Origin: Macrostomum lignano
Lineage: Eukaryota
Reading direction: 5' to 3'
Length of the DNA: 64,000 bases
Assembly: GCA_002269645.1 (NCBI GenBank)
Contig: NIVC01000168.1
Span: forward strand, 186,001-250,000
The position numbers and the translations under genes were made by a program. The notes below the pieces were generated by a model. The model did no database searches. It saw only the letters and a program-made list of their open reading frames with translations, and was not told the DNA's origin. This document shows, piece by piece, positions 2,599 to 60,449 of the stretch (the stretch's first letter is position 1; every line of letters starts with the position of its first letter).

Positions 2599-5500
2599 AT
2601 GCAGGCGCTCAGAAGAGTTTTCGCATTGAATCAAAATGCTTCGTGGACAAGAACAGTCTTAGCAACACAGCAGAAGTCTTGCTTGTTATCCTCATCATCA
2701 ATTCTTGACAGTAAGTATTTTTATTGAGCTTAGATTTCTTATTAAATGGCAACAGTATAGGGGCCTACTTCATACATGTATGAAGTAGTCTTCTAAAATC
2801 GCTGTTTTATTTAATCCATTTTTGTAATCTAATAATCAGGCTCTCACTCACTATTTATTTTGGTGGTTGACCAAGGTTGGCCACAAGGCAAACCTAGGCC
2901 TATTCTTATTGCTTTGAAAAGAAGCCTACGAGAAAGGTAAGGTAGGCCTATAGAAATGGAAGCTTTCTCTTCTCAATTTCCCTTATCTTAACCATTTATG
3001 AGTCCATATCTTTTTGCCAAACTATACTATCTAGTTTTAGATAAGCCTGGCTTTTGAATAACCAATACTAATAGGCAATACTATTATTATATTGTTGACA
3101 AAAAACCTATATTCAAAGTTATAGTTAATAATTAAGACTTCTCTCCATACCTTAGGGGCTTGAACAGCCAAAAGTAATTTAAAGAGGTTAAAAGTTTTTT
3201 CTATTTGCATAAGCTGATTCAGATCAGTGCCTATACTATACCTTAGTGTGTGCTATTTCAGACATGCACTTTTAGTTTATTACAAAAAGTTATTTTATAA
3301 CTAGTATGATAAATGATAAAAAAAGAAGTTAAATATCTTACAAATAGCAAAATTTTAGTAGCTTAGGTCTAATGGTTAATGGTCTAATGGTTAATACTTT
3401 ATAGCCTAATAATAATAATAGTCAAAATAATAACCAAATCTATCTATAAAAGAAGTTTTGTTTATCCGATTTTTAGTCTAAAAAGTTAGGTTTAGAATCA
3501 CTAAATCCTTATTTAATTATAAACTCAATATTAAAATTTATGCATCGTAATTTATTTCTAGTTTATTAGGATTCGATTGTTATTTTCTATATTGATTTGC
3601 GTTTATTAAGATTTCATTAATTAGGCTATAAGAATAGTTATGTTTTTAATTAAACTTTGGCTTTATTTCAATTATTATTATTATTATTGATTTAATTAAC
3701 CTTTAATTTTAGTTGGCATTGGATTATCAGCAGAGAAACGCCAAATTCAAGAGTTGGCACTTACCTTCACTCAAAATGAGGTGGCACCTCATATGCAAAA
3801 GTGGGATGCTGAGCACATATTCCCAGTGGAAATGTTCACCAAAACTGCTGCTCTAGGCTTTGGGGCTATCTATTGCAAAGAAGAACATGGAGGATCTGGT
3901 CTAAGCAGACTTGATGCATCGCTGATCTTTGAGGCAATTGCTACTGGCTGCGTTACAAGCAGTGCCTATCTAAGCATTCACAAGTAAGCTAAATTGTTTG
4001 CTTCATATATTTTATCTCTTTGTATGCATTTTGCCATTGTATGTTGATTGATTGATTAGAGAAATTCCTTGACAGCGTGTTATTATCTGAATGGTCCATA
4101 AGTTTTGTATGGAGCCTGTGATTCTTTGATTGGATAGATAGTGTAATAAATATGCTAGAGATTCGTAGAGAGACTGAAATTCTCCAATTTTTTGTCATTG
4201 AGACTCGCTGGGAGTCTATGATTCTATGCTGTTTGGGCAATGAGATTCGTAGAGAGCCTGTAATTCTTTCTGATTGATCATTGAGATTCGTAGAGAGCCT
4301 ACAATTCCTTCCAATTGGTCATTGAGGTTCGTAGAGTCTACAGTTCTCTCTAATTGGTCATTGAGATTAGTAGAGAGCCTGTAATTCTTTCTGATTGATC
4401 ATCGAGATTCGTAGAGAGCCTGAAATTTTCTCCAATTGGTCTTGAGATTTATAGAGGGCCTGCAATTCTCCAATAGGTCATAGAAATTCGTAGAGAGCCT
4501 ACAATTCTCTAATTGGTAATTAAGATTTGTAGAGAGCCTGCAATTATCTCTAATTGGTCACTGAGATTCGTAAAGCCTAAAGTTCTCTCCAATCGGTCAT
4601 TGAGACTCGTAGAGAGCCTACGATTCTATACTGTTTGGGAATTTAGATTCGTAGATAACTTGCGAAATGGGCCAGAAACGTAAAGAGCCTGATAGATTTT
4701 TGAGAGTCCTAGAGAGCCTTCGAGTCTCTAATTTATTTGTAACCATCAGCCACACGTCGGGAAACTCCTACAACACTGCAGCATGTGCGCCTGGATGATT
4801 GACAGCACTGGCACAGAAGAGCAGCGTGCAAAGTGGCTGCCCCAGCTGGCCCCAATGTCCCGCCTGGCTTCCTATTGCCTCACCGAGCCCGGCAGTGGGT
4901 CGGACGCTGCGGCTCTAAAAACAACTGCCAAAAGTGACGGAAATGATTACGTTCTGAATGGAAGCAAGGTCAGCTTTGGCTGTGGTCAGCTTTAAGATTG
5001 ATTACCCGTTGAAAAGTTTAGCATGACAATAATCGCTAAAGAGTCATTGCAAACAACTCTCTAGTGACTATATAGCGACTCTGGGGCGATTCGTGTGCCT
5101 TCTTAACGACTCAAACACGTCTAATGCGACGGAGAGGTGACTGTTGCGTCACAAGCGGGCCACGTCAGTTGTAGAATCGTAAAAGAGTCATCCAAGAGTC
5201 GTTGTGTTGGCGCTTAACTTTCACCAGGGATGTGACTCTAATTCATCAAGCGACGCAAATGCGCTTTAAACACAACTCTCAGTGACACTACAGCGACTCT
5301 AGCACGCCTCAAATACGACTTTACGGCCCCAGAGTCGTTATATCGTTGTCCCAGAGTCGCAGGCAATAAAACGCTTCAAAGTGATTTTTGAGCGACTCTT
5401 TGAAAACTTTTTGGCGGCTTGTACCGTGACATCTCGTTGTTTTAGGAGTCGTTTAGAGTCAATTTCGAATTTTACCTATGTCATCTGAAACCACTCTAGG

Positions 5501-36126: not shown

Positions 36127-39100
36127 TTAGAGTTTATCCAGAGCCAGACGGGCAGACGATCGGCAATGCTGCCTCAGGTGATTCTCGTTGTTAATAGCCT
36201 GATTGCAGCCCCGCCATCGGCATTTTACTCCGCCACCAATATCACCGCAATGCACCCGTTTCAAGTGACTGCTCAAATCTTCGGCGCTAAGAAATGCTAG
36301 AGTACAATTCGACCAATAGCACCGGAAAATATTCGATTTCAGCGTTGGCAACTGGGTGATCGTGACGCAGCCGCGACTGTCCCCAGCAACCAGACACCTG
36401 GCCGACTCGAAGTACTGAACTGAGGTGACGGCATTGCGGCCGGGACTCGCCCACACCACCACATGGGTGCAGCCGTCGGTTGGCACCGACTTGCCCGAAG
36501 CTAGCGAGGCCGGCAGCCGGTGACAACGCACTGAACCATCGGAGCAGCCAAGGAACAGCCAGGTGGATCGAACGCTAACGTGCAAACTTATTAGACGAAT
36601 GTCCGAACTCGGACAGCCGGTTGTGTCCGAACTGAATTGGCTGATTGGCGACTCCCAACGGCCGGATCGAAAAGTTTGCAGGCACCAGGAGGACAGGCAG
36701 AAGGCTATGGAGCCGGGCAGGGGGCAGCGGACCGCAACTGGGGGCGTTGGCTGCTTGATGTTGAACAGCAGTATGCCGCTGCGCTCGTCTCTGGGTTGGC
36801 AGGGGCGGATTTGAGAGTGAAGAGGGCGGATTTGAGAGTGAAGAGGGCGGATTTGAGAGTGAAGAGAGCGGATTTGAGAGTGAAGAGGGCGGATTTGAGA
36901 GTGAAGAGGGCGGATTTGAGAGTGAAGAGGGCGGATTTGAGAGTGAGGAAGGGCGGATTTGAGAGCGAGGAAGGGCGGATTTGAGAGCGAGGAAGGGCGG
37001 ATTTGAGAGTGAGGAAGGGCGGATTTTAGGGTGAAGAAGGGCGGATTTTAGAGTGAGGAAGGGCGGATTTTAGAGTGAGGAAGGGCGGATTTGAGAGTGA
37101 GGAAGGGCGGATTTGAGAGTGAGGAAGGGCGGATTTTAGGGTGAAGAAGGGCGGATTTGAGAGTGAGGAAGGGCGGATTTGAGAGTGAGGAAGGGCGGAT
37201 TTTAGAGTGAGGAAGGGCGGATTTGAGAGTGAGGAAAGGCGGATTTTAGGGTGAAGAAGGGCGGATTTAAGAGTGAGGAAGGGCGGATTTGAGAGTGAGG
37301 AAGGGCGGATTTGAGAGTGAGGAAGGGCGGATTTTAGAGTGAGGAAGGGCGGATTTGAGAGTGAGGAAGGGCGGATTTGAGAGTGAAGAAGGGCGCGTTT
37401 TAGAGTGAAGAAAGGCGGATTTTAGGGTGAAGAAGGGCGGATTTTAGAGTGAAGAGGGCGGATTTTATATTGAAGAGGGCGGATTTTAGATTGAAGAGGG
37501 CGGTTTTTAGATTGAAGAGGGCGGTTTTTAGATTGAAGAGGGCGGTTTTTAGATTGAAGAGGGCGGGTTTTAGAGTGAAGAGGGCGGATTTTAGATTGAA
37601 GAGGGCGGTTTTTAGATTGAAGAGGGCGGTTTTTAGATTGAAGAGGGCGGTTTTTAGATTGAAGAGGGCGGGTTTTAGAGTGAAGAGGGCGGATTTTAGA
37701 GTGAGGAAGGGCGGATTTTAGGGTGAAGAAGGGCGGATTTTAGAGTGAGGAAGGGCGGATTTTAGAGTGAAGAGGGCGGGTTTTAGATTGAAGATGGCGG
37801 GATTAGATTGAAGAGGGCGGGTTTTAGATTGAAGATGGCGGGATTAGATTGAAGAGGGCGGGTTTTAGATTGAAGATGGCGGATTTTAGATTGAAGAGGG
37901 CGGGTTTTAGATTGAAGAGGGCGGTTTTTAGATTGAAGAGGGCGGGTTTTAGATTGAAGAGGGCGGTTTTTAGATTGAAGAAGGCGGGATTAGATTGAAG
38001 AGGGCGGTTTTTAGATTGAAGAAGGCGGGATTAGATTGAAGAGGGCGGATTTTAGATTGAAGAGGGCGGGTTTTAGATTGAAGGCGGCGGATTGAGATTA
38101 AACGGGGTGGACCGAATATTAAAGGGAGCGGATTGCAGATTCAGGGGCGGATTGCAGATTCAGGGGCGGATTGTAGATTCAGGGGCGGATTGTAGATTCA
38201 GGGGCGGATTGTAGATTCAGGGGCGGATTGTAGATTCAGGGGTGGATTGTGGATTCAGGGGTGGATTGTGGATTCAGGGGCGGATTGTAGATTCAGGGGT
38301 GGATTGTGGATTCAGGGGTGGATTGTGGATTCAGGGGCGGATTGTAGATTCAGGGGCGGATTGTAGATTCAGGGGTGGATTGTAGATTCAGGGGCGGATT
38401 GTAGATTCAGGGGCGGATCGTGGATTCAGGGGCGGATCGTGGATTCAGGGGCGGATCGTGGATTCAGGGGCGGAATGTGGATTTAGGGGCGGATTGTGGA
38501 TTCAGGGGCGGATCGTGGATTCAGGGGCGGATTGTAGATTCAGGGGCGGATTGTAGATTCAGGGGCGGATCGTGGATTCAGGGGCGGAATGTGGATTTAG
38601 GGGCGGATTGTGGATTCAGGGGCGGATTGTAGATTCAGGGGCGGATCGTGGATTCAGGGGCGGATCGTGGATTCAGGGGCGGAATGTGGATTTAGGGGCG
38701 GATTGTGGATTCAGGGGCGGACTGTAGATTGAAGGGAGCGAATTGTAGATTGAAGGGAGCGGATTGTAGATTGAAGGGAGCGGATTGTAGATTAAAGGGA
38801 GCGGATTTTAGATCGAAGGAAGCAGATTGTGGATCAGGGGCGGATTGTAGATTCAGGGGCGGATTGTAGATTCAGGGGTGGATTGTAGATTCAGGGGCGG
38901 ATTGTAGATTCAGGGGTGGATTGTAGATTCAGAAGCGGATTGTAGATTCAGGAGCGGATTGTAGATTCATGGGCGGATTGGTTAACAATGAAAATGAGCT
39001 ACACAAAATCAAGTGAAACTCACCGAACAATAATAAGCTTGTCAGTCTGACAGCCAACTAAAGCAACGCGCCTGCCTTCGCAGACGGTCAGCTCCAGGCA

Positions 39101-42100
39101 GGACACCGGTCCGTCGCAGCCAATCCAGCCAGACATAAGTGTGGCGCTATTCAAATCGTACTTGCACACCCGGCCGCTGCCCAGGCCCAGATAGATACAA
39201 TCCCATCGATGACAGGCAGCCCATAGTTGAGCTTCTAGGCTGCTTCGCTTCAACAAATCGCCAGTTCTAGTATTGTGCACAGACAGCACCGCGTCGGAGC
39301 CGCCGCTATAGATTCTAAACACATCGATAGAGCAGCCAAGGTTAGTAACTACCATACAGTTCACCCGGCACTGGCTGCTGGAACTGCCGCCTCGCCGATA
39401 TGTAGTCAAGCATTCGTGAGTCTGCAATGAGAACCGTTTAGCGGTGCCATCGGCCGAGCCGGTGTACAGGAAACCGTTGCTAATTAGGGTGCAAATTATC
39501 TGATCTGAATTGTGCGCCTGAAATTTGCCAGGCAATGCCATTGTACTGGTTGGGGCCGATTCTTCCATTCTGGTGCGCTTTCGTTGCTCGCTTAGACTCA
39601 GGGTGGGTCTGCGCTGGGCGGCTGGGGTTTGAGCTCTGCGGTTGCTGTCGCTGCTGCTGCTGCTGCTGTCGCTGCTGCTGCTCTCGAATCGGCGTCTTTG
39701 TGCGAAATGAAAACCCATGGTTCTTTTTTACCTTATCTTTTTACGCTTATCTCTGCTGTCTACCGCTTATCTCTGCTATCTACCGCTTATCTCTCTGCTG
39801 TCTACTGCTTATCTCTGTTGTCTACCGCTTATCTCTCTGTTGTCTACCGCTTATCTCTGCTGTCTACCGCTTATCTCTGTTGTCTACCGTTTATCTCTCT
39901 CTGTCTACCGCTTATCTCTGCTGTCTACCGCTTATCTCTGCTATCTACCGCTTATCTCTCTGCTGTCTACTGCTTATCTCTCTGCTGTCTACTGCTTATC
40001 TCTGCTGTCTACCGCTTATCTCTGCTGTCTACCGCTTATCTCTCTGCTGTCTACTGCTTATCTCTGCTGTCTACCGCTTATCTCTGTTGTATACCGCTTA
40101 TCTCTGCTGTCTACCGCTTATCTCTGTTGTATACCGCTTATCTCTGCTGTCTACCGCTTATCTCTGTTGTCTACCGCTTATCTCTGCTGTCTACCGCTTA
40201 TCTCTGTTGTCTACCGCTTATCTCTGCTGTCTACCGCTTATCTCTCTGTTGTCTACCGCTTATCTCTGCTGTCTACCGCTTATCTCTCTGTTGTCTACCG
40301 CTTATCTCTCTGTTGTCTACCGCTTTTCTCTGCTGTCTACCGCTTATCTCTGTTGTCTACCGCTTATCTCTCGCTGTCTACCGCTTATCTCTGCTGTCTA
40401 CGGCTTATCTTTGCTGTCTACGGCTTACCTCTGCTGTCTACCGCTTATCTGTGCTGTCTACCGCTATCTCTGTTGTCTACCGCTTATCTCTGATGTCTAC
40501 CGCTTATCTCTGCTGTCTACCGCTTATCTCTGCTGTCTACCGCTTATCTCGGCTGTCTACCGCTTTATCTCTGCTGTCTACCGCTTATCTCTGCTGTCTA
40601 CCGCTATCTCTCTCTGTCTACCGCTTATCTCTCTGTTGTCTACCGCTATCTCTGTTGTCTACCGCTATCTCTGTTGTCTACCGCTTATCTCTGCTGTCTA
40701 CCGCTTATCTCTCTCTGTCTACCGCTTATCTCTGCTGTCTATGGCTTACCTCTGCTGTCTACCGCTTATCTCTGCTGTCTACTGCTATCTTTGTTGTCTA
40801 CCGCTATCTCTGTTGTCTACCGCTTATCTCTATGTTGTCTACCGCTTATCTCTGCTGTCTACCGCTTATCTCTGCTGTCTACTGCTTATCTCACTGAATT
40901 TACCGCTTATCTGTCTGTCTACCGCTTTCCCTAAAAATTACAACTGCTATCCTGGATCACCGATATTTCAAGCACAAAACCGCCGACAAGATCCAGCCAC
41001 TTACCGACTGGAAGATTTGGATGTACCCGCAACACTGGCAACTGCAGCACCAATAGTCGCTGCGGAATCAGAACTTTTATTATTATTATTGTTACTTTTG
41101 AGCTTATTTCTCATATCCAAATCCACCACAATGACGTCATCGGAATCTGCCTCCACTTTAACATTCTTGTCTTTCTGCTTTTTATTTTCTTTTTCGCCAT
41201 TCCTACTAACAGTAGTAGGAATATTAGTTGTACTGCTACTAGTAATATCGGTGGACTTCTCAGATTTAACAACTCCAGCTTGCTGTAAAGAACGAGCAAT
41301 ACAGGCAAACGTTGAGGAGACATTGTTGGTGTCATTCGGTCCAGCAGCTGACGTTCTTGGCCTCTTAGCCGCTGGCTCGTCTGAGTCATCTCCATCATCA
41401 TCATTATTATCGGCAGGAGCATCTCCAGTTGCAGTGGATGAATTAGCCGCTTGAGCAGACAGTCTCTCAGCCACTAGGCGATCCATTTCGGCAAACGTCA
41501 GATCTCTGGACTGCTCGGATCGAATTATACTGCGGATCACTTGTAGAGTGGCTTCGTCTACAGGGGATGAGGCGCTAGCGGAGACTGGGCCAGTGGCGTC
41601 GGAAGAACACGGCTCAGCTGGTGGTGGCGGAAGCGGCGACGGCGGCTGCGCAGGCGGCGGCGTTGGTGGAGCAACTCGAGGTTCAGCTGCAGTTTGCTGT
41701 GGCGAAGCACTGGACGGCCCTGAGACACTTTCTGGAAATGCAAGAACAAATTGTTTAGTTCTGGTACCACTGGGCTGGCCTAGCAACTGAGGCTTTGAGA
41801 GGCTGGCACAGCAACTGAGGATCTGGGAGGCTGGCACAGCAACTGAGGATCTGGGAGGCTGATCCAGCAACTGAGGATCTGGGAGGCTGGTCCAGGAGGC
41901 TGGATCTGGGAAGCTGTGGCATAGCAACTGAGGATCTGGGAGGCTGGCCCAGCAACTGAGGATCTGGGAGGCTGGCCCAGCAACTGAGAATGTGGGAGGC
42001 TGGCCCAGCAACTAAAGATCTGGGAGGCTGGCCCAGCAACTGAGAATGTGGGAGGCTGGCCTAGCAACTAAAGATCTGGGAGGCTGGCCCAGCAACTGAG

Positions 42101-45100
42101 AATGTGGGAGGCTGGCCCAGCAACTAAAGATCTGTGAGGCTGGCCCAGCAACTGAGAATGTGGGAGGCTGGCCCAGCAACTAAAGATTTGGGAGGCTGGC
42201 CCAGCAAATGAGGATCTGAGCAGTTAGCAGTGGATGCATACCACCCTACTGAATCTATTAAATAAAATGTACTATGCAACGACGCATTATCGGTTATAAA
42301 TAAACATGTTTAGATTGTTTCAAAGCGATTGATTTCTATCCCTATATTTAACTCAGTCTTTCCTTTTCAATTTCACTAGTCTGATGAGTGAGAGAACTCA
42401 GAGCTGTAGTTCCAATTAGGCATTAGTCACGAACTGCGTCTTTGCACCTAGGTTTTATCCCTGGATTCCAATTGCATTTGGTTCCTAATTGGGCTATATT
42501 TAACCGACTTAGACACGAGGCTTCGCGGAGAAAATATTAGAGAAACTTTGAAGTAAGACAATATGAAACGCTGATTGGATTGCAACTAGCTCGTACTCGC
42601 AGATAAAATGCATACCAATCCGACGGAATTACACATAGTAACTCGTCTTATACTGAGCCTTTTCTACAGCGGTTGAGCAAAAGTTGGGTGCGAGCCTGTG
42701 TAAAGGAAACTTAAACGTAAGTTTATTCTTCGACCTACTAGTACTAGCTACTATCTGATCTTAGCATCTCTCTCTACTTGTCTCTGTATCTTGCCGGCCT
42801 CTAATCCTGCCGCTTATCTGCGTATCTCGCCGGCCTCTCTTATCTTGCCGCCTCTTTGAACTTGCCACTTGTCTGTGTATTTCGCCGGCCTTTCTTATCT
42901 TGTCGCCTCTTTGATCTTGCCGCTTATCTGTGTATCTCGCCGGCCTCTTTGTTCTTGCCGCTTATCTGTGTATCTCACTGGCCTCTTTGTTCTTGCCGCT
43001 TATCTGTGTATCTCGCCGGCCTCTCTTATCTTGCCGCCTCTTTGAGCTTGCCACTTGTCTGTGTATTTCGCCGGCCTTTCTTATCTTGTCGCCTCTTTGA
43101 TCTTGCCGCTTATCTGTGTATCTCGCCGGCCTCTTTGTTCTTGCCGCTTATCTGTGTATCTCGCCGGCCTCTTTGTTCTTGCCGCTTATCTGTGTATCTC
43201 GCCGGCCTCTTTGTTCTTGCCGCTTATCTGTGTATCTCGCCGGCCTCTTTGTTCTTGCCGCTTATCTGTGTATCTCACCGACCTCTCTTATCTTGCCGCC
43301 TCTTTGATCCTGTCGGCCTCTCATCTTGCCGCATCTTTGCTCTTGCCGCCTGTATCTGATCTGAGCCTCTGATCGTGCTAAATCTGACTTCGAAGATTCT
43401 TAGTCTGATTTTGCTACCCCAGTCAAATAAGCGCTGTTTACGCCATTGCCGTAATCGCCCTCAACGGCACAAGTCTGCAACAAATCATTAATCTGGAACT
43501 TGCAAGTTAAATTAATATATCATAAATTTTATCTCAACAGACAAAACGATGACAAACGACAACAACGGAGATTCTTTCATCAGCACAGTCGCTTACCGGC
43601 AAGAAAATCAAATAAGTTTAACAACAGCATCCACACAGACTGAACAGCAACTATTTGGCACAGATTTCATATCGGTCGGCGGCCTGGCTTTAATATTTGT
43701 GGCACTATTCCTGCTACTATCTTCAGCAGTAGGCATTTTAGTGTATCAATTAGCTAGCCGGGGCCTAATCTGGCGCAGTACTGAAGCCGAGCTCAATCAG
43801 GTCAACCAGCTCTGGTCTCGGCCATCTAGCAGGGCTGGCACAACAATGGGCACTAGGACCACAGCAATGGGCGGTAGTCCTAGCGAAGCTGGCGCAATGC
43901 CAACGTCCCCTAGAAGCAGCCTGAGTGGCGGCAGCGGCAGGCAAAGCGGCGAAGCTTCTGCCACTAATAGCGGCATCGTTGTCCGACGAAACAGCAGCCG
44001 AGTGTCCATTATATCGCCTAGTAGCGTCACTAGCAACAGCAATAGCAACAACAATATTAACAGTACTACTCATAGTAATAGTCCGCAGACATCTATATCC
44101 CCGTCAATTGCGTTGACAAGAGTGGAAAGTTGAGTTACTAAGTGCATCTAATTGCTCAAGTCTTATTATTTTGCAAGTTTCATTTTTTCTCATTAACCTC
44201 AAATTCACAAGCATTGACACAATTGAATCTCATTAAATATAAAGCAAAACATCCCGAAGTCTCGGGTATAACAAAAAATTACCTTTTAAAATTGCCAGTC
44301 GTTTAGACGTCAAATTAGCCTTCTTTTCAGTCAGCTGTAAAATGAATTTTATACTAATGCTTGTAAGCTAAAACAAGAACGAGGAGCACTTGGCAATCTT
44401 AAAAATTAACAATATAATATAGTACAGCAACTGAGGATCTGTGAGGCTGGCCCAGCAACTGAGGATCTGTGAGGCTGGCCCAGCAACTGTGGATCTGGGA
44501 GGCTGGCCCAGCAACTGAGGATCTGGGAGGCTGGTCCAGCAACTGAGGATCTAGGAGGCTGGTCCAGCAACTGAGGATCTGGGAGGCTGGTCCAGCAACT
44601 GAGGATCTGGGAGGCTGGCCCAGCAACTGAGGATCTAGGAGGCTGGTCCAGCAACTGAGGATCTAGGAGGCTGGTCCAGCAACTGAGGAACTGTGAGGCT
44701 GGCCCAGCAACTGAGGATTTGGGAGGCTGGACCAGCAACTGAGGATCTGGGAGGCTGGCCCAGCAACTGAAGACGTGGGATGCTTGCCCATCAAGCTCTG
44801 GGTAGCAACACCCTATGACTGAATGCCATACATATAAACTCACCTGTTTCATAGCAGCCTCCTTATTTTCAAGAGTCTGCTGCATCTCTTGCACCCTGAG
44901 CCGCAGCTCCGCAAGCTCTTGACGCTGACTCTCTAGCTCAGTCTCCAGCTGCTCCTCTTGCAGCGACAATTCCAGGGCTTGCTGCAATCGCTGAACGGCA
45001 AGACTTGGCTGAGGTTTTGACTCCGTTGATCTAGTCTCATCCACTGCTTGATCAGGTGCTTCAGGTGCTAATTCGCCCCCCTGAGGCCCCGCACCAGACG

Positions 45101-46703
45101 TTGAAGCTTGCGATTGCTGCGACGTTGAAGCTGACAGAAGGCTGTTTATTGGCTGAGACATCGGCGCCTGCGACACTGTGTCAGATTCGTCTTCGCCTCT
45201 GGGATCGGGTCGTTTGGATCGCGATGTTCGCGACTGTTGCAATAAAGGGTTCAGCGAGAAATTAGGCGGTGGTCAGAAATAATGGCTTGGGCGCTAAACA
45301 TGCTACTTATCTGCGCTTTTGCTAAATAGTAATATAAGTTTGTTATTATGTACTCTTACTAAAGACTAGCATCTCTCTCTATGGAGAGGTTAGCATCTCT
45401 CTCTATGGGGAGGGTAGCATCTCTCTCTATGGAGAGGGTAGCATCTCTCACTATGGGGAGGGTAGCATCTCTCTCTATAGGGAGGGTAGCATCTCTCACT
45501 ATGGGGAGGGTAGCATCTCTCACTATGGAGAGGGTAGCATCTCTCACTATGGGGAGGGTAGCATCTCTCACTATGGAGAGGGCAGCATCTCTCACCATGG
45601 AGAGGGTAGCATCTCTCTCTATGGGGAGGGTAGCATCTCTCACTATGGGGAGGGTAGCATCTCTCACTATGGGGAGGGTAGCATCTCTCTCTATGGAGAG
45701 GGTAGCATCTCTCTCTATGGGGAGGGTAGCATCTCTCACTATGGAGAGGGCAGCATCTCTCACTATGGAGAGGGTAGCATCTCTCTCTATGGAGAGGGTA
45801 GCATCTCTCACTATGGGGAGGGTAGCATCTCTCACTATGAGGGTAGCATCTCTCACTATGGAGAGGGTAGCATCTCTCTCTATTGGGAGGGTAGCATCTC
45901 TCACTATGGGGAGGGTAGCATCTCTCACTATGAGGAGGGTAGCATCTCTCTATGGAGAGGGTAGCAAAATTCTACTAACACACCTTGCCACCAGCCGCGG
46001 CGCCACTATTAACAACATCCTCCCAGATGCGTCGATCTTTGCGAGTTTTCGCACCGCTATTGGCCAAATCCAACACTCGGACGGCTCGATTCGGCGAATT
46101 CGACATGCCAGAAGTTGTCGGGCCAGCAGTTTCAGTCTGATCAGATGACAAGTGAACTGATGGTCGAATTCGACCGCTGCTAGCACTACTACTAGTAGTT
46201 GGATTAGCTGCAGGTAACGATTGCGCTTCATTTTGCCATGGCTCTACCTGCTGCTGCATTAACTGTGGCGGAGTTGGCAGCAAAGCCCCTGTCTGCTGCT
46301 TCTGTTGTTGCTGATGGTTTTGACGCTGATAAGGACCAGGATATGCTGATGAATGATAAGCAGAACTGTCAATACCATGCTGATGGCCCCAATGTCCATA
46401 TTGCTGTTGTTTTTGTTGTTGTTGATGCTGCTGCTTGTGGCGAGGGGGTCTATATCTGTGATGATGGTTGTTGCCACTACCATGGCCACTGCTGCCACAA
46501 CCAATGTTGCCACCACCACGGCCAATGTTGCCACCACCACGGCCAATGTTGCCACCACCATGGCCAATGTTGCCACCACCATGGCCAATGTTGCCACCAC
46601 CACGGCCAATGTTGCCACCACCATGGCCAATGTTGCCACCACCACGACCACCATTGCCACCATTATGACCACTGCTGCCACCTCTTTGACTATGGGCAGA
46701 CAT
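36127..46703 (-). CDS. ZNF106: ZNF106 (ZFP106) orthologue, ~1074 aa: low-complexity N-terminus, coiled coil, WD40 propeller, two C-terminal C2H2-type fingers; exons 46703-45984, 45233-44844, 44334-44283, 41731-41005, 39695-39024, 36790-36127
   Basis: Phase-compatible GT-AG chain (0,0,1,2,2), 3225 nt. Compared from memory with human ZNF106: ALELSLQEEQL (vs LLNISLREEEL), KQLTEKKANLTSKRLAILK, FLYTGSADGTAKRF, RVNCMVVT, RWDCIYLGLGSG, VRDERSGILL, and FRCYWSNCTLAF...LKCRW-type KCRWRGC. Confidence 0.88.
36803..38985. repeat. G-rich 21-bp to 20-bp minisatellite filling ZNF106 intron 5
   Basis: Unit shifts from GAGGGCGGATTTGAGAGTGAA to GAGGGCGGTTTTTAGATTGAA to GGGGCGGATTGTAGATTCA. Confidence 0.95.
39745..40930. 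repeat. ~20-bp minisatellite TCTCTGCTGTCTACCGCTTA in ZNF106 intron 4
   Basis: Direct inspection; explains ORFs 39535-41454, 39629-40897 and 39717-40493. Confidence 0.95.
41775..42220. repeat. 28-bp dispersed minisatellite family, copy 3 (ZNF106 intron 3)
   Basis: Direct inspection. Confidence 0.93.
42770..43350. repeat. 38-bp minisatellite TTGCCGCTTATCTGTGTATCTCGCCGGCCTCTTTGTTC
   Basis: Direct inspection; shares the CCGCTTATCT core with the intron 4 array. Confidence 0.92.
43549..44133 (+). CDS. Putative single-pass membrane protein (194 aa) nested antisense in ZNF106 intron 3
   Basis: Non-repetitive ATG-to-TGA ORF with one hydrophobic helix (GGLALIFVALFLLLSSAVGILVYQL) and a Ser-rich tail. 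An acceptor TTTTATCTCAACAG lies 8 nt before the ATG, and ATTAAA lies near 44232. Confidence 0.6.
   Translation: MTNDNNGDSFISTVAYRQENQISLTTASTQTEQQLFGTDFISVGGLALIFVALFLLLSSAVGILVYQLASRGLIWRSTEAELNQVNQLWSRPSSRAGTTMGTRTTAMGGSPSEAGAMPTSPRSSLSGGSGRQSGEASATNSGIVVRRNSSRVSIISPSSVTSNSNSNNNINSTTHSNSPQTSISPSIALTRVES
44425..44772. repeat. 28-bp dispersed minisatellite family, copy 4 (ZNF106 intron 2)
   Basis: Direct inspection. Confidence 0.93.
45365..45965. repeat. 27-bp minisatellite AGGGTAGCATCTCTCACTATGGGG/GGAG in ZNF106 intron 1
   Basis: Direct inspection. Confidence 0.95.
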
Positions 46704-47499
46704 TTAACTGCACTGTATTATCATAGTACAAAAACTTTATAAATATTTTAATTTCTTCTTTTGAGGCTTTATGTCCAACTGCAATTGGATTTTAGACAGA
46801 TAATAGTCAGAGATAAAGTGAGAATACAATATCAACTTAGTGTTCTTATTTAATAAAGGTGTAGAATAGCTTAATACTTAACATATCCAACTCTTATAGT
46901 ATAATATATCCAATTTCATGTTTTGAAGGTATCCAACCAATGTTTAAATTCAAACCTAGCAATGTTAACTAGGGGCTTATATGATAAAATTTGGCCTATA
47001 GCTTATGCCACTTCAGATAAAAATAGTTTTGGTTAACTATAAGTTAGCATTAGTGAATTTAAACACCAAAGGGATATTGTTTTTTTAGATTAGGCTTAGA
47101 GCAAGTTTTATTCTGGTTTATATAATGTCTTTAGTGACTCTTCTCTAGATTTTCTATTAATGTATTTATCTTTTTTGGGTTATTTTGATAAAATACTTGA
47201 TTACTTTATCCTTTGTAGAAAGATATTGGCAATCTAGTGCCCCCCTCTGGGATGCCCAGTAAGCAAGGAGCAAAGAATATTCATGGAAATTCATTAAAAA
47301 GCACATGGCACTTTAGACAGGTCCTATTTTAAGAAAGGATCATTGGTATTATCCTCATATTTTGTAGGCTAATTTATGGTTTGCTAATCTAAACTGCAAA
47401 TGCTATGTCTAATTGTCTCATTAGTTGAATTAGACTATTTCTTTTTTAAATGCTATATTCTAAGTTCCTAATAAATTCTTAGATCTTAAAACTTTCTAA

Positions 47500-47710
47500 G
47501 CTTTTAGCAGCCACTTTATTGACAGTTTCCTTTAGCCAATCATCATCAAGTTGCTAAGTTTCATTAGACATCACTTTTTATGCTATTATATATAGGATTG
47601 CCTTTCTGGCATAAAAGGAGACCTTCTTGTTAACCATGGATGTTGCTAGCCTATATACCAATATTCCAATGGAGGCTAGCTTCAAATGTATATAGGTATT
47701 CAAGGAATAT
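47500..47710 (+). mobile_element. Heavily decayed Penelope-like (PLE) reverse transcriptase relic
   Basis: 47509-47580 reads SHFIDSFL*PIIIKLLSFIRHHFL. 47617-47668 reads GDLLV/(+1)TMDVASLYTNIP. Both resemble PLE RT motifs (S.F.D..LQP....LPS.I.D...FL and LVTMDVxSLYTNIP). Confidence 0.65.
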
Positions 47711-47859
47711 CACATTTACTAATGCCTACAATGTACATATCCATCTGATTATATGTCTATACAAGTTAAACCTAAAGAGCAAAAACTTTATTCAAGTTCA
47801 ATGACAAGTAATTTTTGTAAGTAAATGAAATTGCCATAGAGAAATTGTTTTTACATAGC

Positions 47860-48950
47860 TATAAAGGCTTATAGCAAAAATAATAAAGGCTATTAGGAGC
47901 TAGAAAAGCCTGTAGACTAGTCTATTTTGCTAGAGTCAATATATTTTACTTTGCTAGAATCTAAGAATATATCTAACCTTTTTTCTAGCTTAATCTTTTT
48001 AGAAATCTAGCTTTTCCCTAGCCTCAGACTTCTTTTAAAAGTTATACTATTAGCCTTTGGTCCTTTTTTAAATATAGTCTCTGCTTTAGTTGCAATCTTT
48101 TAGAATCCTTTTATCCTTCTTAGACTCTAGCCTTTAATTAGACTCAATTAATCTAAGAATCTATCTTTTCCCTAGCTCTAATCCTTCTAGCAATTCAGCC
48201 ATTCCTCTATCTGAACCCAATACTTTAAGGAATCTAGCTTCTCCCTTATTCCAATTTTTAGAAATCTAGCCATTCCTTTATCCTAATAATCCTCTAAGAA
48301 TGCAGCCATTCCCCTATCCCAATCTTCTAGAGAATCTGACTTCTCTTTTATCCTAATTCTCTAAGGAATCTATCTTATCCCTCATCCTAATCCTCCAGGG
48401 AATCTGGCCTATCCTCCATTTTCCTTTAAAGAATCTGGCCTACTCTTCATTTTAGTCCTCTAGGGAATCTGGCCTATCCTTCATCACAATCCTCTAGATA
48501 ATCTGGTCTTTCCTCCATTATAATCCTCTAGGGAATCTGGCCTATCTCCTATCCTAATCCTCTAGGGAATCTGGCCTATCTCCTATCCTAATCCTCTAAG
48601 GAATCTGGCCTATCTCTTATCCTAATCCTCTAGGGAATCTGGCCTATCTCCTATCCTAATCCTTTAGGGAATCTGGCCTATCTCTTATCCTAATCCTCTA
48701 GGGAATCTGGCCTAGCTCCTATCCTAATCCTCTAGGGAATCTGGCCTAGCTCCTATTCTAATCCTCTAAGGAATCTGGCCTATCTCCCATCTTAATCCTC
48801 TAGGGAATCTAGCCTACCCCTCATCCTAATCCTCCAGGGAATCTTGACTACCCCCTATCCTAATCCTTCAAGGAGTCCAGCCTATTTCTTATCCCAATCC
48901 TCCAGGGAATCCGGCCTACCCCCTATCCCAATCTTCTAAGAATCTAGCCT
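47860..48950. repeat. 34-bp tandem repeat CCTAATCCTCTAGGGAATCTGGCCTATCTCCTAT, decaying towards the left
   Basis: Clean units at 48530-48790; progressively mutated units at 47860-48500. Confidence 0.85.
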
Positions 48951-50804
48951 CTAATATGCTCACATCAACTATCCTTGGATCTAGCCTTTCAAGAATTTTT
49001 GCTTTGCTTTCAACAAATATTATTTAACTAGTTATTGTTTCTAGCTAATTCTATAGAGTAAAAATCTATTTACAGAAAAGCAGAAAACAGTTATTTATAT
49101 ATTATATTTTGCTTTGCAAGGCTACTTAAAGAAGTGTCTAAAGATACAAATCAATAGAGGCATACAGTGTAGCTCTTTAGTGTAAGGAAAACAAATGGCT
49201 TAAAAACAAACTCTTATAACTCTCATAATCACTCAGGTAGTACTAGAAAATAGTAGGTCCTAGTACTGAGAAATTCCATAAGAATATCATCATAGGTTTT
49301 AAAAAGTTTTTATTACTTATCTATTTTATTATTAGCTAAAATCATTCATTAAGATATAATTTTTATTATACATTAATCATTATAGCCAGAGTGGCCAAAA
49401 TTCTTGTTTTTTAATGCTTTTGTTAAAGTGTACCCAACAAAAAAGTTGATGTTGGGGTATATCACAATATATACAAATACAATATTTTAAAAGATCTATA
49501 TATAACACTAAACTGACAAAACATGCCATGAGTTTGTTTTTTTCAATATATATTTAGGCCTAGCCTATGTGTGCTTGAGTTATATTGAATGTTTCTTTTT
49601 TTATTCTCTTTAGATGAACTAAAATGAAGTTTAGTGAGCATGGTAAATTGGTAATAAAGTGATTATTTTAAAAATGTCCACAATTAAATTTTACAAAAAG
49701 TTTTTTATAACCTAACAGTGGCTTGCAAAGTTATTTTTTAACTAAAAATTCAACCCTCATATTGGCTGAATTGCATAGAAAAAATTAACTTCTTATCTTG
49801 AAAGAGAAGACTTAAAAGAGCCAGCAAAGTTGTTAAATGTCCATAATGAAAAAATGTCTTCTAAGATGGCCCACATGCCCCTCTGCAATCCATCCAACAT
49901 TCTGAGATCAGCAGTATCTTTACTCAGTAATCTTTACTCATTTAAATGTACCTTGAGATATGCAGCGAGGTAAGGAGACAACATTGACAAGAGAAGACTA
50001 AAGAGCAGTGGCTTAGAGAAAGCCCAAGCAAAGGTGTGCTATGCAAATTTCATGGCTTGAAAAAGAGCTAGCTACTGCTGTTGCTACTGCTGCTGAGGCA
50101 GAAACTTGTCACAACAGTCCTTATGCAAGCAGGAAGTTTGCTTCAATGGCTATAACAAGGAGTTTTTTATTTAACCCTATATGACAAAAGAAATCTAACA
50201 TGTGTGCACTAAATCATTTTTATGCCAAGTTTAATATATCCCTATTCTCTTGGTCATGAGAATGAGAGTCACATCATGGAAAAGGAGGGGCTCATAAAGC
50301 GGGCGCATGGGCCCGGAGATAGGCCACGCGAGAGCCCACGCACGCGCGGTTTTAATATGCACACGCACAAAAAATTAACAAAATGACAAGGGCCAGCAGA
50401 AAGAGAGGAGAGAGATAACGAATGAATTATAATTCTAAAGATGAGAGGCAAAGGTGGCAATCGAATCTCACTTTATCTCACCTAATCTCACTTTATCTCA
50501 CCTAATCTCACCCTATCCCACCGACGCGAATCTCACCCTATCTTATTTTAATGATCATATTATTGCGTTCAGCAATTTTCATGCTCTGTTTAAGGATTTA
50601 TCAAAACTTCGAGCCAATATTGAGGCAAGTTCCCCTCTAGTATAACAGCTAGTTAGTGCAGTACACGGTTCTTGTACTGGAGGCTGGTCCCCAGTAGTTG
50701 CAGTTGCAGTTTTGATCACCAAGACAAGAGAGCTGTTAGTTGGTATGGTATTGGTATTGGAACGTTAGGATTCCAATGTGAGTCACGCCAATTGCACCGC
50801 CTGT

Positions 50805-51275
50805 AGGCCAGCAGGCAGGTACTCCTGCATTTTGGCGCCACAGGCAGGTACTCATTTTGGCGCCACAGGCAGGCACTCATTTTGGCGCCGCATGCAGGCA
50901 GGCACTCATTTTGGCGCCAAAGGCAGCTGCACTGATTCTGGCGCCGAAGGCAGCTGCACTCATTCTGGCGCCGAAGACAGCTGCACTCATTTTGGCGCCG
51001 CAGGCAGGGTACTCATTTTGGCGCCGAAGGCAGCTGCACTCATTTTGGCGCCGCAGGCAGCGGTACTCATTTTGGCGCCGAAGGCAGCTGCACTCATTTT
51101 GGCGCTGCAGGCAGGGTACTCATTTTGGCGCCGAAGGCAGCGGTACTCATTTTGGCGCGGCAGGCAGCGGTACTCATTTTGGCGCCGCAGGCAGCTGCAC
51201 TCATTTTGGCGCCGAAGGCAGCTGCACTCATTCTGGCGCCGAAGGCAGCTGCACTCATTTCGGCGCCGAAGGCAC
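50805..51275. repeat. ~27-28 bp minisatellite GCACTCATTTTGGCGCCGAAGGCAGCT
   Basis: Direct inspection. Confidence 0.92.
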
Positions 51276-51879
51276 CATATTTAGGTAACCCCCTGAAGCA
51301 AAATTATTGATTTCCATAACTGGTTACAAGTTGAGGCCGGGGGGGGGACAAAGCATTAGCTTGTCCCCCCCAAAGCTTTTACTGCGGGGGGCATGTCACC
51401 TATTCGATTTCATCCAACGTGGGAAGCAGCCGCTTATCAGAAATGGCTGCAATTTGCGACCTCGTCGGATGAGAGGCCATCGACAGTCGCATAACGCGTG
51501 CCCATACGTGTGTTTTAATTCGTGTTTAACTAATAACTTTCAAGGAATTGATTGGGCTGAATTCGTTAAACAATGAAATTTACCAGCGAAGAGAATTAGC
51601 AACGGACTTAGCGATGCCCTGAGTAGGGCTAGAGAAGGTTGTTGTGCAAGCTCAGGTTAGTCTGCAGTCACAGGCATTCCAAACCACGAGCCCCGATGCT
51701 AAAAGGCGTGCGAAATGAAAAAACGGGCCCCAGGATGTTGGACCCCCACTGAGCGAATTCTGACACTGAGCGAGTGTTTAAAATTGACGTTATAATCGTG
51801 TTAATTCGTTCCATATTCATTTTCTATATTGACGTATGAAAGAAGTTATGTACAGTTAAATCTGGCTGAGCCCATTAAG

Positions 51880-59432: not shown

Positions 59433-59433
<1 letters not shown>

Positions 59434-59465
<32 letters not shown>

Positions 59466-59492
59466 TGTAGTAGTAGTAGTAGTAGTAGTAGT

Positions 59493-59530
<38 letters not shown>

Positions 59531-59743
59531 ATAGTAGTTGTAGTAGTAGTAGTAGTAGTAGTTGTAGTAGTAGTAGTAGTAGTACTAGTAGTAGTAGTAG
59601 TAGTAGTAGTAGTAATAGTAGTTGTAGTAGTAGTAGTAGTAGTAGTTGTAGTAGTAGTAGTAGTAGTTGTTGTAGTAGTAGTAGTAATAGTAGTTGTAGT
59701 AGTAGTAGTAGTAGTAGTTGTAGTAGTAGTAGTAGTAGTAGTT

Positions 59744-59799
<56 letters not shown>

Positions 59800-59829
59800 T
59801 GTAGTAGTAGTAGTAGTAGTAGTAGTAGT

Positions 59830-59864
<35 letters not shown>

Positions 59865-59919
59865 ATAGTAGTTGTAGTAGTAGTAGTAGTAGTAGTTGTA
59901 GTAGTAGTAGTAGTAGTAC

Positions 59920-59953
<34 letters not shown>

Positions 59954-59980
59954 TGTAGTAGTAGTAGTAGTAGTAGTAGT

Positions 59981-60012
<32 letters not shown>

Positions 60013-60045
60013 ATAGTAGTTGTAGTAGTAGTAGTAGTAGTAGTT

Positions 60046-60083
<38 letters not shown>

Positions 60084-60110
60084 TGTAGTAGTAGTAGTAG
60101 TAGTAGTAGT

Positions 60111-60142
<32 letters not shown>

Positions 60143-60166
60143 ATAGTAGTTGTAGTAGTAGTAGTT

Positions 60167-60225
<59 letters not shown>

Positions 60226-60342
60226 TGTAGTAGTAGTAGTAGTAGTAGTAGTAGTTAGTAGTAGTAGTAGTAGTAGTAGTAGAAGTAATAGTAGTTGTAG
60301 TAGTAGTAGTAGTAGTAGTTGTAGTAGTAGTAGTAGTAGTAC

Positions 60343-60380
<38 letters not shown>

Positions 60381-60389
60381 ATAGTAGTT

Positions 60390-60449
<60 letters not shown>

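What the first reader, a model, noticed from the sequence alone, without database searches (positions are those of the whole stretch)
46647..50299. 3.65-kb block almost completely erased of CpG, beside CpG-rich DNA
By manual count there are only two CG dinucleotides (48912, 49966) in 3653 bp, against roughly 90-100 expected at about one-third GC (o/e near 0.02). Sequence from 50300 onward and at 45990-46220 is CpG-rich. The block holds a Penelope-like RT relic and a tandem repeat, and lies directly 5' of the ZNF106 ATG. Such focal, near-total loss implies a targeted cytosine methylation/deamination process. Two readings: (a) repeat-directed, RIP-like or TE-methylation silencing, which is unusual for an invertebrate; (b) intense 5' gene-body methylation of a 5' UTR intron. 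This is the best candidate for an undescribed system in this window.
Basis: partly seen in the sequence, partly recalled or inferred. Interest (0 to 1): 0.8.

Follow-up and report, generated by a model that had tools for sequence, protein, structure and literature searches.

The report
CpG-erased 5' domain in flatworm gene
A 3.65-kb stretch just upstream of a flatworm (Macrostomum lignano) gene has lost nearly all its CG dinucleotides, most likely a scar of long-term, very focal germline DNA methylation, which makes it a lead on how this little-studied animal places methylation, not evidence of a new system.

Summary
Window 46647-50299 holds exactly 2 CpGs against 100 expected (o/e 0.02, 95% CI 0.002-0.07). 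It is the strongest CpG-poor segment in the window and is not explained by low complexity or AT content.

The window is Macrostomum lignano, a flatworm that keeps DNMT1 and DNMT3.

The block is native DNA:
- It has no match to plasmids, phages or Rfam.
- An ORF runs across its left edge.
- Its non-CpG oligonucleotide style matches ACAD8 intron 1, 43 kb away.

The depleted domain really spans about 46225-50299. It runs into coding exon 1 of a WD40 + C2H2 (ZNF106-like) gene and ends sharply at a 9-CpG cluster. ACAD8 shows a milder 5'-proximal CpG-poor domain crossing exon and intron.

A second signature, CAG/CTG halved and TAG/CTA doubled, maps only to these two domains. The expected TpG/CpA excess is absent.

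Best reading: a footprint of intense, 5'-biased germline methylation at CG, with weaker CAG. RIP-like and repeat-directed readings are not supported, and the 'Penelope RT relic' could not be confirmed. Methylation itself is untested here. Interest is moderate.

The parts
46647..50299 (.). CpG-void block as reported: 2 CpG against 100 expected
   Evidence: It is the top-scoring CpG-poor segment of the whole window.
46225..46703 (-). 5' part of coding exon 1 of the WD40 + C2H2 (ZNF106-like) gene. It is also CpG-poor (7 against 32 expected, o/e 0.22), so the depleted domain extends to about 46225.
45984..46224 (-). 3' part of the same exon, CpG-normal (o/e about 1.1). It marks the left (downstream) edge of the domain inside one continuous ORF. 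The donor AAG|GTGTGT at 45984/45983 is inferred from the sequence.
46701..46703 (-). Start codon of the ZNF106-like gene, with an in-frame TAA immediately upstream.
46704..46719 (-). Candidate 3' splice or trans-splice acceptors (AATACAG|TGCAG|TTAA-ATG) just upstream of the ATG. If used, the block would be a 5'UTR intron or outron. This is inferred only.
   Evidence: read directly from the sequence. No transcript data are available.
47979..48950 (+). 34-bp minisatellite (consensus CCTATCCTAATCCTCTAGGGAATCTGGCCTATCT), about 19 clear copies at 48313-48950 and degenerate copies from 47979. The unit has no CpG.
47620..47680 (+). Short motif FLLTMDVASLYTNIPMEAS that resembles an RT motif of Penelope-like elements. 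It has no statistical support.
   Evidence: translation; no Pfam hit; no homologue.
48912..48913 (.). Surviving CpG 1, in one minisatellite copy where the consensus has TG.
49966..49967 (.). Surviving CpG 2.
50300..50348 (.). Dense CpG cluster (9 CpGs in 49 bp) forming the sharp right (upstream) boundary. It may be an unmethylated promoter-proximal element; this is inferred.
2640..4160 (+). Comparison locus: the 5'-proximal CpG-poor domain of ACAD8 (intron 1 o/e 0.32, exon 2 0.22). It is followed by a CpG-normal 3' gene body, and it carries the same CAG-to-TAG signature.

Best explanation
The block is native Macrostomum lignano DNA lying at the 5' end of a WD40 + C2H2 (ZNF106-like) gene. Together with the first ~480 bp of coding exon 1 it forms a domain of about 4.1 kb (about 46225-50299).

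Inference: this domain has been almost fully cytosine-methylated in the germline for a long time by the DNMT1/DNMT3 machinery the species retains. Under that reading, 5-methylcytosine deamination removed CpGs from the neutral part almost to completion (o/e 0.02), while coding constraint held some in exon 1 (o/e 0.22). A weaker collateral methylation at CAG, as DNMT3-type enzymes produce, would turn CAG/CTG into TAG/CTA. That would also explain why CpG loss left extra TpA rather than extra TpG/CpA.

The domain is bounded upstream by an apparently protected CpG cluster at 50300 and ends sharply inside exon 1. ACAD8 in the same window shows the same architecture in milder form, so the targeting looks 5'-proximal and gene-linked rather than repeat-directed.

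Shown: the depletion, its boundaries, the native composition, the second signature and its co-localisation, the species, and (from the literature) the presence of DNMT1/3.
Inferred: methylation of this locus, deamination as the cause, transcription through the block, and the CAG component.
For: - Depletion and boundaries.
- Species: ACAD8 exons are essentially identical to the UniRef M. lignano protein. M. lignano keeps DNMT1 and DNMT3 and has low 5mC (PMC11292947, PMC9246332, PMC10658182).
- Native origin. An ORF is continuous across the CpG-rich/CpG-poor switch in exon 1. Di- and trinucleotide style, with CG-containing words excluded, correlates r=0.92/0.84 with ACAD8 intron 1, against 0.35-0.65 (dinucleotides) and 0.05-0.55 (trinucleotides) with CpG-normal AT-rich DNA. 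There are no plasmid, phage or Rfam matches.
- The 5'-biased pattern recurs in ACAD8: intron 1 0.32 and exon 2 0.22, then intron 3 1.23 and exon 4 0.97.
- The ZNF106-like gene body downstream is CpG-normal at 0.8-1.1.
- Context spectrum against controls: CGN odds ratios 8-23; CAG->TAG 3.3 (p=5e-12); CTG->TTG 1.9; all other contexts 0.76-1.5. G at position -1 is protective.
- Across the whole window, the only complex 800-bp windows with TAG:CAG above 3 lie in 2801-3800 and 46801-49800.
- Simulation: o/e at or below 0.07 needs CpG transitions at least about 35-fold faster than other C->T changes, with a point estimate near 100-fold. This is high but still within a deamination framework.
- CpG o/e is an accepted proxy for historical germline methylation (PMC8857923).
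Against: - No methylation data were examined, and published summaries report only 'low' global 5mC in adult M. lignano.
- The classical companion of CpG decay is missing. TpG/CpA o/e is 1.08 in the block, 1.06 in controls and 0.80 in ACAD8 intron 1, where the simulation predicts about 1.15-1.2. The CAG add-on is a post-hoc way to reconcile this.
- The CAG/TAG contrast could instead reflect the controls being younger or TE-derived DNA with a coding-like k-mer bias.
- An o/e of 0.02 is about ten times lower than in vertebrates or in methylated invertebrate genes. It requires unusually complete methylation, weak T:G repair, or great age.
- The TSS and transcript structure are unknown, so 'gene-body' versus 'promoter/intergenic' is not settled.
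- The pattern rests on two genes in one 64-kb window.
Confidence: 0.55

Rival explanations
1. Repeat- or transposon-directed silencing. The block is methylated because it contains a decayed mobile element and a minisatellite (for example piRNA-guided DNMT3 targeting), and the CpG loss is a by-product. Gene position would be incidental.
For: A 34-bp array of about 1 kb sits in the middle of the block. A short RT-like motif lies at 47620-47680. The same deamination signatures would be expected.
Against: - No TE homology could be demonstrated.
- The block has no other copy in the window.
- About half of the roughly 30 tandem arrays in the window carry CpGs and keep them in most copies, for example 36803-38980 with o/e above 1.3.
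- The depletion extends into unique coding sequence.
- ACAD8 intron 1 and exon 2, which have the same signatures, are not repeat DNA.
Confidence: 0.15
2. A context-specific mutational or selective process that does not involve 5mC. Candidates are an AID/APOBEC-like deaminase, oxidative damage at CpG, or selection against CpG and CAG in a transcribed outron or intron.
For: TpG/CpA excess is absent. ApG/CpT, CpC and TpA, rather than CpA/TpG, take up the missing CpG share. Cytosines preceded by G are spared, which looks like an enzyme's flanking-base preference.
Against: No known deaminase has CG >> CAG specificity with near-complete CpG removal, whereas DNMT-type enzymes have exactly this context order. 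The species has DNMT1/3 (PMC9246332). There is no functional reason known for selection against CpG over 3.6 kb of non-coding DNA.
Confidence: 0.12
3. The block was 'born' CpG-free: an insertion of foreign, organellar, viral or TE DNA from a CpG-poor source, or an assembly chimera.
For: The right boundary at 50300 is very sharp. GC drops from about 0.5 to 0.3.
Against: - The oligonucleotide style equals that of a bona fide M. lignano intron.
- The depletion continues into the adjoining coding exon within one ORF.
- A native-type minisatellite lies inside the block.
- There are no matches to plasmids, phages or Rfam rRNA/tRNA families.
- No ORF longer than 54 aa is present.
- There are no flanking TIRs or TSDs at the CpG boundaries.
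Confidence: 0.07
4. Sequencing or consensus artefact: systematic miscalling of methylated CpG in long-read data, so that the CpGs exist in the worm but not in the assembly.
For: This would give focal, near-total loss with sharp edges exactly where methylation is dense.
Against: It would not create the CAG/TAG, TpA and ApG/CpT shifts or the low GC. It would have to convert about 98% of sites. It predicts a TpG/CpA excess, which is not seen. The read technology behind the assembly is unknown to me.
Confidence: 0.04

Closest known systems
Mosaic or gene-body methylation footprints in invertebrates (low CpG o/e in germline-methylated genes; e.g. cnidarians PMC8857923, oyster PMC4378273)
   Same: CpG depletion is confined to part of the genome and linked to genes of housekeeping type. 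The species has DNMT1 and DNMT3. Neighbouring tissue-specific-type genes (F5/8-type-C lectin exons at 29763-31343) are CpG-normal.
   Different: The depletion is about ten-fold deeper (0.02 against the 0.3-0.6 usually reported; that range is from my own knowledge). It is restricted to the first 1.5-4 kb rather than the whole gene body. It shows no TpG/CpA excess. Methylation here is unmeasured.
5'-biased gene-body methylation of insects (own knowledge, not checked in a paper here)
   Same: The domain starts just downstream of a CpG-retaining promoter-like element, covers 5' exons and introns alike, and fades towards the 3' end.
   Different: Insects show mild CpG depletion, mostly in exons. 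Here the effect is strongest in non-coding DNA and far stronger overall.
DNMT3-dependent non-CG (CAG/CAC) methylation co-occurring with CG methylation in mammalian oocytes, ES cells and neurons (own knowledge)
   Same: The context order CG >> CAG > other CA, weak at CT/CC, matches the inferred erosion spectrum. A CAG methylation level of a few percent would give the roughly 3-fold shift seen, if CG gives about 100-fold.
   Different: This is known as an epigenetic mark and has not been reported as a mutational footprint. It is not known in flatworms, apart from a non-CpG methylation report for Taenia solium cited in PMC10658182.
Fungal repeat-induced point mutation (RIP)
   Same: C-to-T erosion makes AT-rich, TpA-enriched DNA with sharp borders. 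TpA/ApT is 1.05-1.09.
   Different: RIP acts on duplicated DNA, prefers CpA over CpG and depletes CpA/TpG. Here the sequence is single-copy in the window, CpG is the main target, CpA/TpG is not depleted (index 1.36-1.47), and RID-type enzymes are fungal.
Vertebrate-type global CpG depletion with CpG islands
   Same: A CpG-poor tract abuts a short CpG-dense cluster at a possible promoter.
   Different: The rest of this genome region is CpG-normal (window o/e 0.68; unique AT-rich DNA 0.8-1.0), so the depletion is an island in a CpG-normal sea, the reverse of the vertebrate pattern.

Membership tests
Methylation-driven CpG-depleted domain (germline 5mC footprint) | CpG o/e far below that of matched unmethylated DNA | tested here: met
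   0.02 against 0.81-0.99 in AT-matched controls.
Methylation-driven CpG-depleted domain (germline 5mC footprint) | Reciprocal excess of TpG/CpA | tested here: not met
   CpA/TpG o/e is 1.08 in the block, 1.06 in controls and 0.80 in ACAD8 intron 1. The simulation expects about 1.15-1.2.
Methylation-driven CpG-depleted domain (germline 5mC footprint) | The organism encodes maintenance and de novo CpG methyltransferases | tested here: met
   The species was identified as M. lignano. DNMT1 and DNMT3 retention is stated in PMC11292947 and PMC9246332. The genes themselves are not in this window.
Methylation-driven CpG-depleted domain (germline 5mC footprint) | Residual CpGs of the domain are methylated in germ cells | not testable with these tools
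   No methylome data are accessible. Wasik et al. 2015 is not held.
Gene-body (transcription-linked) methylation | The domain lies within the transcribed unit of a broadly expressed gene | tested here: inconclusive
   The domain covers the 5' part of exon 1 and the DNA directly upstream of the ATG, which has acceptor-like sites. The TSS is unknown and donor candidates are ambiguous. The ACAD8 analogue is clearly intragenic.
RIP / RIP-like repeat-directed mutation | The target is duplicated DNA | tested here: not met
   No second copy exists in the window apart from the internal minisatellite. The rest of the genome was not searchable.
RIP / RIP-like repeat-directed mutation | (CpA+TpG)/(ApC+GpT) below 1.03 together with TpA/ApT above 0.89 | tested here: not met
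   Block values are 1.47 and 1.05. Without the minisatellite they are 1.36 and 1.09. The first index fails. The second passes, but it also passes or nearly passes in controls (0.85-1.02).
Penelope-like retroelement relic | A recognisable reverse-transcriptase domain (and a GIY-YIG endonuclease) | tested here: not met
   No Pfam family at E<=10 in the three + frames of 46706-48298. The 47-aa stretch found no homologue. Only a motif-level resemblance remains.
ZNF106-type protein (neighbouring gene) | WD40 beta-propeller followed by C-terminal C2H2 zinc fingers | tested here: inconclusive
   There are weak beta-propeller hits (E 2e-4 to 9e-3, below the curated cut-offs) and C2H2-type hits in the last exon. 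No orthologue was retrieved. The architecture is consistent, but orthology is unproven.

The most novel reading that the evidence does not exclude
Macrostomum lignano may concentrate its DNA methylation in short, almost fully methylated 5'-proximal gene domains that also carry non-CG (CAG) methylation. These domains would mutate so fast (CpG transitions about 35-100 times background, possibly through weak T:G repair or enzyme-assisted deamination) that they become CpG-void. This would be the first germline non-CG methylation footprint, and the most extreme focal CpG erosion, described in an animal. It would also explain why global 5mC in this worm looks 'low'.
Probability: 0.2. Interest if true: 0.75.

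Novelty: new variant of a known kind. Interest (0 to 1): 0.45.

Why it matters
Where free-living flatworms place their methylation is described as unknown (PMC9246332). M. lignano is the flatworm model that kept DNMT1 and DNMT3.

A CpG-void domain with a sharp border, a gene-5' position and a co-located CAG-to-TAG shift gives concrete, cheap predictions. It says which few CpGs should be fully methylated, where the borders should lie, and that non-CG methylation should be detectable.

If the pattern holds genome-wide, three things would follow:
- Methylation in this lineage is focal and 5'-biased.
- 'Low global 5mC' partly reflects targets that have already been mutated away.
- Methylation is a strong local mutagen shaping 5' UTR introns and N-terminal coding sequence.

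If it is a one-off, it is a curiosity.

Tried and rejected
- Chance or low complexity: rejected. Other CpG-free gaps are tandem arrays, but the block is complex.
- AT content: rejected. AT-matched DNA has o/e 0.8-1.0.
- More genome from the same species: failed.
  - The metagenome scan with the dispersed 28-bp minisatellite gave one chance hit in a 64%-GC bacterial contig.
  - The exact-protein look-up of exon 1 found nothing.
  - The homologue search with the WD40 exon returned one weak plant hit, so this gene is not in the protein collection.
- RT relic: no Pfam hit and no homologues.
- Vector, phage, organellar or RNA-gene origin: no plasmid or phage match, and no Rfam match inside the block, where nothing reached gathering score.
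- TE termini: a 17-nt inverted match (46810 / 50483) does not coincide with the CpG borders, and its right arm is part of a small tandem repeat. It is judged to be chance.
- Minisatellite columns as a record of CpG decay: uninformative. Variation is general C<->T on a pyrimidine-rich strand.
- The CACGG/CATGG alternation in the exon-1 21-bp repeat: explained by amplification of a 42-bp higher-order unit, so it is not independent evidence.
- Promoter and donor-site inspection: ambiguous. Donor-like GTGAGA sites lie in a 10-bp repeat at 50472-50537.
- Correlation of CpG loss with CpT/CpC gain outside the block: mostly a normalisation effect, so not interpreted.
- Wasik et al. 2015, the only M. 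lignano methylation data I know of, is not in the library. Further literature searches added no locus-level information.


Full report
OBSERVATION

Window 46647-50299 (3653 bp, GC 0.335) contains two CG dinucleotides, at 48912 and 49966, against 100 expected from its C and G content (o/e 0.02). GpC is not depleted (o/e 1.36). The flanks are CpG-normal to rich:
- 45975-46224 has 19 CpGs against 16.8 expected.
- 50300-51500 has 67 against 81, beginning with 9 CpGs in 49 bp.

The window as a whole has o/e 0.68. Every other long CpG-free gap is a low-complexity tandem array whose unit happens to lack CG. The only complex exceptions are the three consecutive gaps that make up the block and a 536-bp gap in ACAD8 intron 1. 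Unique AT-rich DNA of the same GC content elsewhere in the window has o/e 0.81-0.99.

Poisson P(<=2) is 2e-37 against those controls, 7e-12 against the 0.32 of ACAD8 intron 1, and 5e-7 against a vertebrate-like 0.2. The exact 95% interval of o/e is 0.002-0.072. A likelihood scan of all 64 kb returns 46648-50293 as the best CpG-poor segment. With a softer model it returns 46226-50293 (9 CpGs against 125.6 expected).

WHAT THE SEQUENCE IS

Five exons at 2599-7254 encode an isobutyryl-CoA dehydrogenase (ACAD8). It is essentially identical to the UniRef protein of Macrostomum lignano: one substitution, with the other differences being my own splice-junction errors. The window's 46% GC and the roughly 30 minisatellite arrays fit what I recall of that genome, though I did not check this in a paper. 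So this is a free-living flatworm.

The minus strand from 46703 down to 36127 carries a gene with these features:
- a low-complexity N-terminal exon,
- a WD40-type propeller (weak Pfam hits),
- C2H2-type fingers in the last exon.

This architecture is consistent with ZNF106, but no orthologue was retrieved. Its ATG is at 46703, preceded by an in-frame TAA and by acceptor-like AATACAG|TGCAG| sites. The block is therefore non-coding DNA directly 5' of this gene: a 5'UTR intron, an outron or an intergenic spacer. I could not decide which.

Inside the block:
- The longest ORF has 54 codons.
- There is a 34-bp minisatellite, about 1 kb long including degenerate copies.
- Nothing matches Rfam, Pfam, plasmids or phages, or the rest of the window.
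- The 'Penelope-like RT relic' reduces to a motif of about 20 residues (FLLTMDVASLYTNIPMEAS) without statistical support.

THE BLOCK IS NATIVE, AND THE DOMAIN IS LARGER THAN REPORTED

The CpG-poor state continues into coding exon 1. Positions 46225-46703 hold 7 CpGs against 32 expected (o/e 0.22). Then, within the same ORF, 45975-46224 holds 19 against 17. A boundary inside a continuous reading frame argues against a chimera or an insertion whose edge is the exon border.

With CG-containing words excluded, the di- and trinucleotide profile of the block's left half correlates r=0.92/0.84 with ACAD8 intron 1, which lies 43 kb away in another gene. Its correlation with CpG-normal AT-rich segments is only 0.35-0.65 (dinucleotides) and 0.05-0.55 (trinucleotides). 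The right half is intermediate. The two regions share no alignable sequence, so this is a shared compositional class, not shared ancestry.

A SECOND GENE SHOWS THE SAME ARCHITECTURE

In ACAD8, CpG o/e runs as follows:

| Segment | CpG o/e |
|---|---|
| start-codon exon | 0.61 |
| intron 1 | 0.32 |
| exon 2 | 0.22 |
| first part of intron 2 | 0.27 |
| end of intron 2 | 0.82 |
| exon 3 | 0.65 |
| intron 3 | 1.23 |
| exon 4 | 0.97 |
| exon 5 | 0.78 |

So ACAD8 has a 1.5-kb 5'-proximal CpG-poor domain that ignores exon/intron borders, followed by a mostly CpG-normal body. The exception is intron 4 (0.23), which is taken up by a 42-bp array whose unit has no CpG.

The ZNF106-like gene has the same layout, only longer (about 4.1 kb) and deeper. 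Its remaining exons and unique intron pieces have o/e 0.8-1.04. The three F5/8-type-C lectin exons at 29763-31343, which are likely tissue-specific, are CpG-normal. Tandem arrays as such are not eroded: roughly half carry CpGs and keep them.

A neutral simulation with AT-biased mutation shows that any CpG hypermutability of at least 5-fold should raise TpG/CpA o/e to about 1.15-1.2. The block has 1.08, controls have 1.06, and ACAD8 intron 1 has 0.80. TpA, ApG/CpT and GpC are raised instead.

I broke down the C-versus-T imbalance by sequence context relative to the controls:

| Context | Odds ratio |
|---|---|
| CGN | 8-23 |
| CAG->TAG | 3.3 (p=5e-12) |
| CTG->TTG | 1.9 (p=3e-4) |
| all other contexts | 0.76-1.5 |
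| overall AT shift (baseline) | 1.28 |

By the preceding base, CCAG->CTAG has odds ratio 7.4, TCAG 3.9, ACAG 2.9 and GCAG 1.1. Cytosines after G are therefore spared, which fits the high GpC.

The TAG:CAG site ratio is 4.8 in the left half of the block, 2.1 in the right half and 6.2 in ACAD8 intron 1. In eleven other unique segments, including AT-matched ones, it is 0.85-2.25. In an 800-bp sliding scan of the entire window, the only complex windows with a ratio above 3 lie in 2801-3800 and 46801-49800. The CAG-to-TAG shift thus co-localises precisely with the two CpG-poor domains.

MECHANISM

M. lignano, unlike planarians and parasitic flatworms, retains DNMT1 and DNMT3 and shows low-level 5mC. 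The genomic pattern is described as unknown (PMC11292947, PMC9246332, PMC10658182). CpG o/e is the standard proxy for historical germline methylation in invertebrates (PMC8857923, PMC4378273).

The most economical reading is that about 46225-50299 is a long-standing, almost fully methylated germline domain at the 5' end of the gene. Under this reading, 5mC deamination removed CpGs nearly to completion where the sequence is neutral, and partly where it codes.

The simulation puts the required CpG transition rate at 35-fold or more (point estimate about 100-fold) above other C-to-T changes. My recollection is that the mammalian figure is roughly 10-15-fold. The required rate is therefore high, but conceivable with complete methylation, AT-biased mutation and weak T:G repair. 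That last part is inference.

The context order CG >> CAG > other CA, with CT and CC unaffected, is what DNMT3-type enzymes show for CG and non-CG methylation (my own knowledge). If full CG methylation gives about 100-fold, a CAG methylation level of a few percent gives the observed roughly 3-fold shift. Conversion of CpG-derived CAG/CTG onward to TAG/CTA would then explain both the missing TpG/CpA excess and the extra TpA and CTAG. This last step is a post-hoc inference.

An alternative for the second signature is that the control segments are younger or TE-derived DNA that keeps a coding-like CAG excess and TAG deficit.

RIVALS

- Repeat/TE-directed silencing (0.15) shares the chemistry but not the targeting logic. 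It is weakened by the lack of TE evidence, by the CpG-rich arrays nearby, and by the spread into unique coding DNA.
- A non-5mC context-specific mutational or selective process (0.12) is kept alive by the missing TpG/CpA excess.
- Foreign or 'born CpG-free' DNA or a chimera (0.07) and a consensus artefact at methylated CpGs (0.04) are unlikely for the reasons given above.
- RIP proper fails two of its defining tests: no duplication, and the CpA/TpG index.

COMPARISON AND NOVELTY

In kind, this is a methylation-type CpG-depleted domain, a known phenomenon. It differs from the usual case in four ways:
- its depth, about ten-fold below methylated invertebrate genes and vertebrate bulk DNA;
- its restriction to a short 5'-proximal domain with sharp borders in an otherwise CpG-normal region;
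- the absence of TpG/CpA excess;
- the co-located CAG-to-TAG shift.

I therefore class it as a new variant of a known kind, conditional on methylation being confirmed. As one locus with one milder analogue, it is a lead and not yet a result.

LIMITS

- No methylome, transcript, population or comparative data could be reached.
- No further M. lignano sequence was accessible with these tools.
- All mutational inferences are from composition, not from polarised substitutions.
- The control set is 8.7 kb from the same window.

Noticed in passing
window 2640-4160 (ACAD8 exon 1 to start of intron 2): A second, milder 5'-proximal CpG-poor domain (o/e 0.22-0.32). It crosses exon/intron borders and carries the same CAG-depleted, TAG-enriched signature. 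The 3' half of the gene is CpG-normal.
   Followed up: yes
window 27971-28397, 34692-35110, 41773-42218, 44425-44794: The same 28-bp minisatellite unit (CAGCAACTGAGGATCTGGGAGGCTGGCC, or a close variant) is expanded at four separate loci. Two of them lie inside the ZNF106-like gene. It looks like a dispersed minisatellite family or the tail of a mobile element, and the unit has no CpG.
   Followed up: partly
whole window (about 30 arrays; e.g. 9847-10969, 22350-23167, 36803-38980, 39744-40927, 59433-61672): The minisatellite load is extraordinary. It includes a 1.1-kb C-rich 22-mer array with almost no G, 2.2 kb of G-rich GGGCGG-containing 19-21-mers, and a 2.2-kb (AGT)n tract. Several arrays lie in open reading frames on both strands.
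   Followed up: no
window 46501-46682 (exon 1, minus strand): A coding 21/42-bp repeat gives GGGNIG(R/H) peptide repeats. Arg (CGT) and His (CAT) alternate through a single CpG/TpG difference in a 42-bp higher-order unit.
   Followed up: partly
window 14366-17529 (minus strand): Long Thr/Gly/Pro-rich repeat ORFs ([13 protein letters not shown]...) look like a mucin- or adhesive-type secreted protein gene. The region is GC-rich (0.57-0.62) with CpG o/e 0.5-0.7.
   Followed up: no
window 29763-31343 (minus strand): Three tandem exons or ORFs each encode an F5/8-type-C (fucolectin-like) domain. They are CpG-normal (o/e 0.9-1.2), in contrast to the two housekeeping-type genes.
   Followed up: partly
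window 46810-46826 and 50483-50499: A 17-nt inverted match (94%) roughly brackets the block, and its right arm lies in a 10-bp tandem repeat whose minus strand reads as repeated splice-donor-like AG|GTGAGA. It does not coincide with the CpG borders and is probably chance.
   Followed up: partly
all AT-rich unique DNA of the window: GpC is over-represented everywhere (o/e 1.3-1.7), most strongly in the CpG-poor domains. Cytosines preceded by G appear to be spared from the C-to-T shift.
   Followed up: partly
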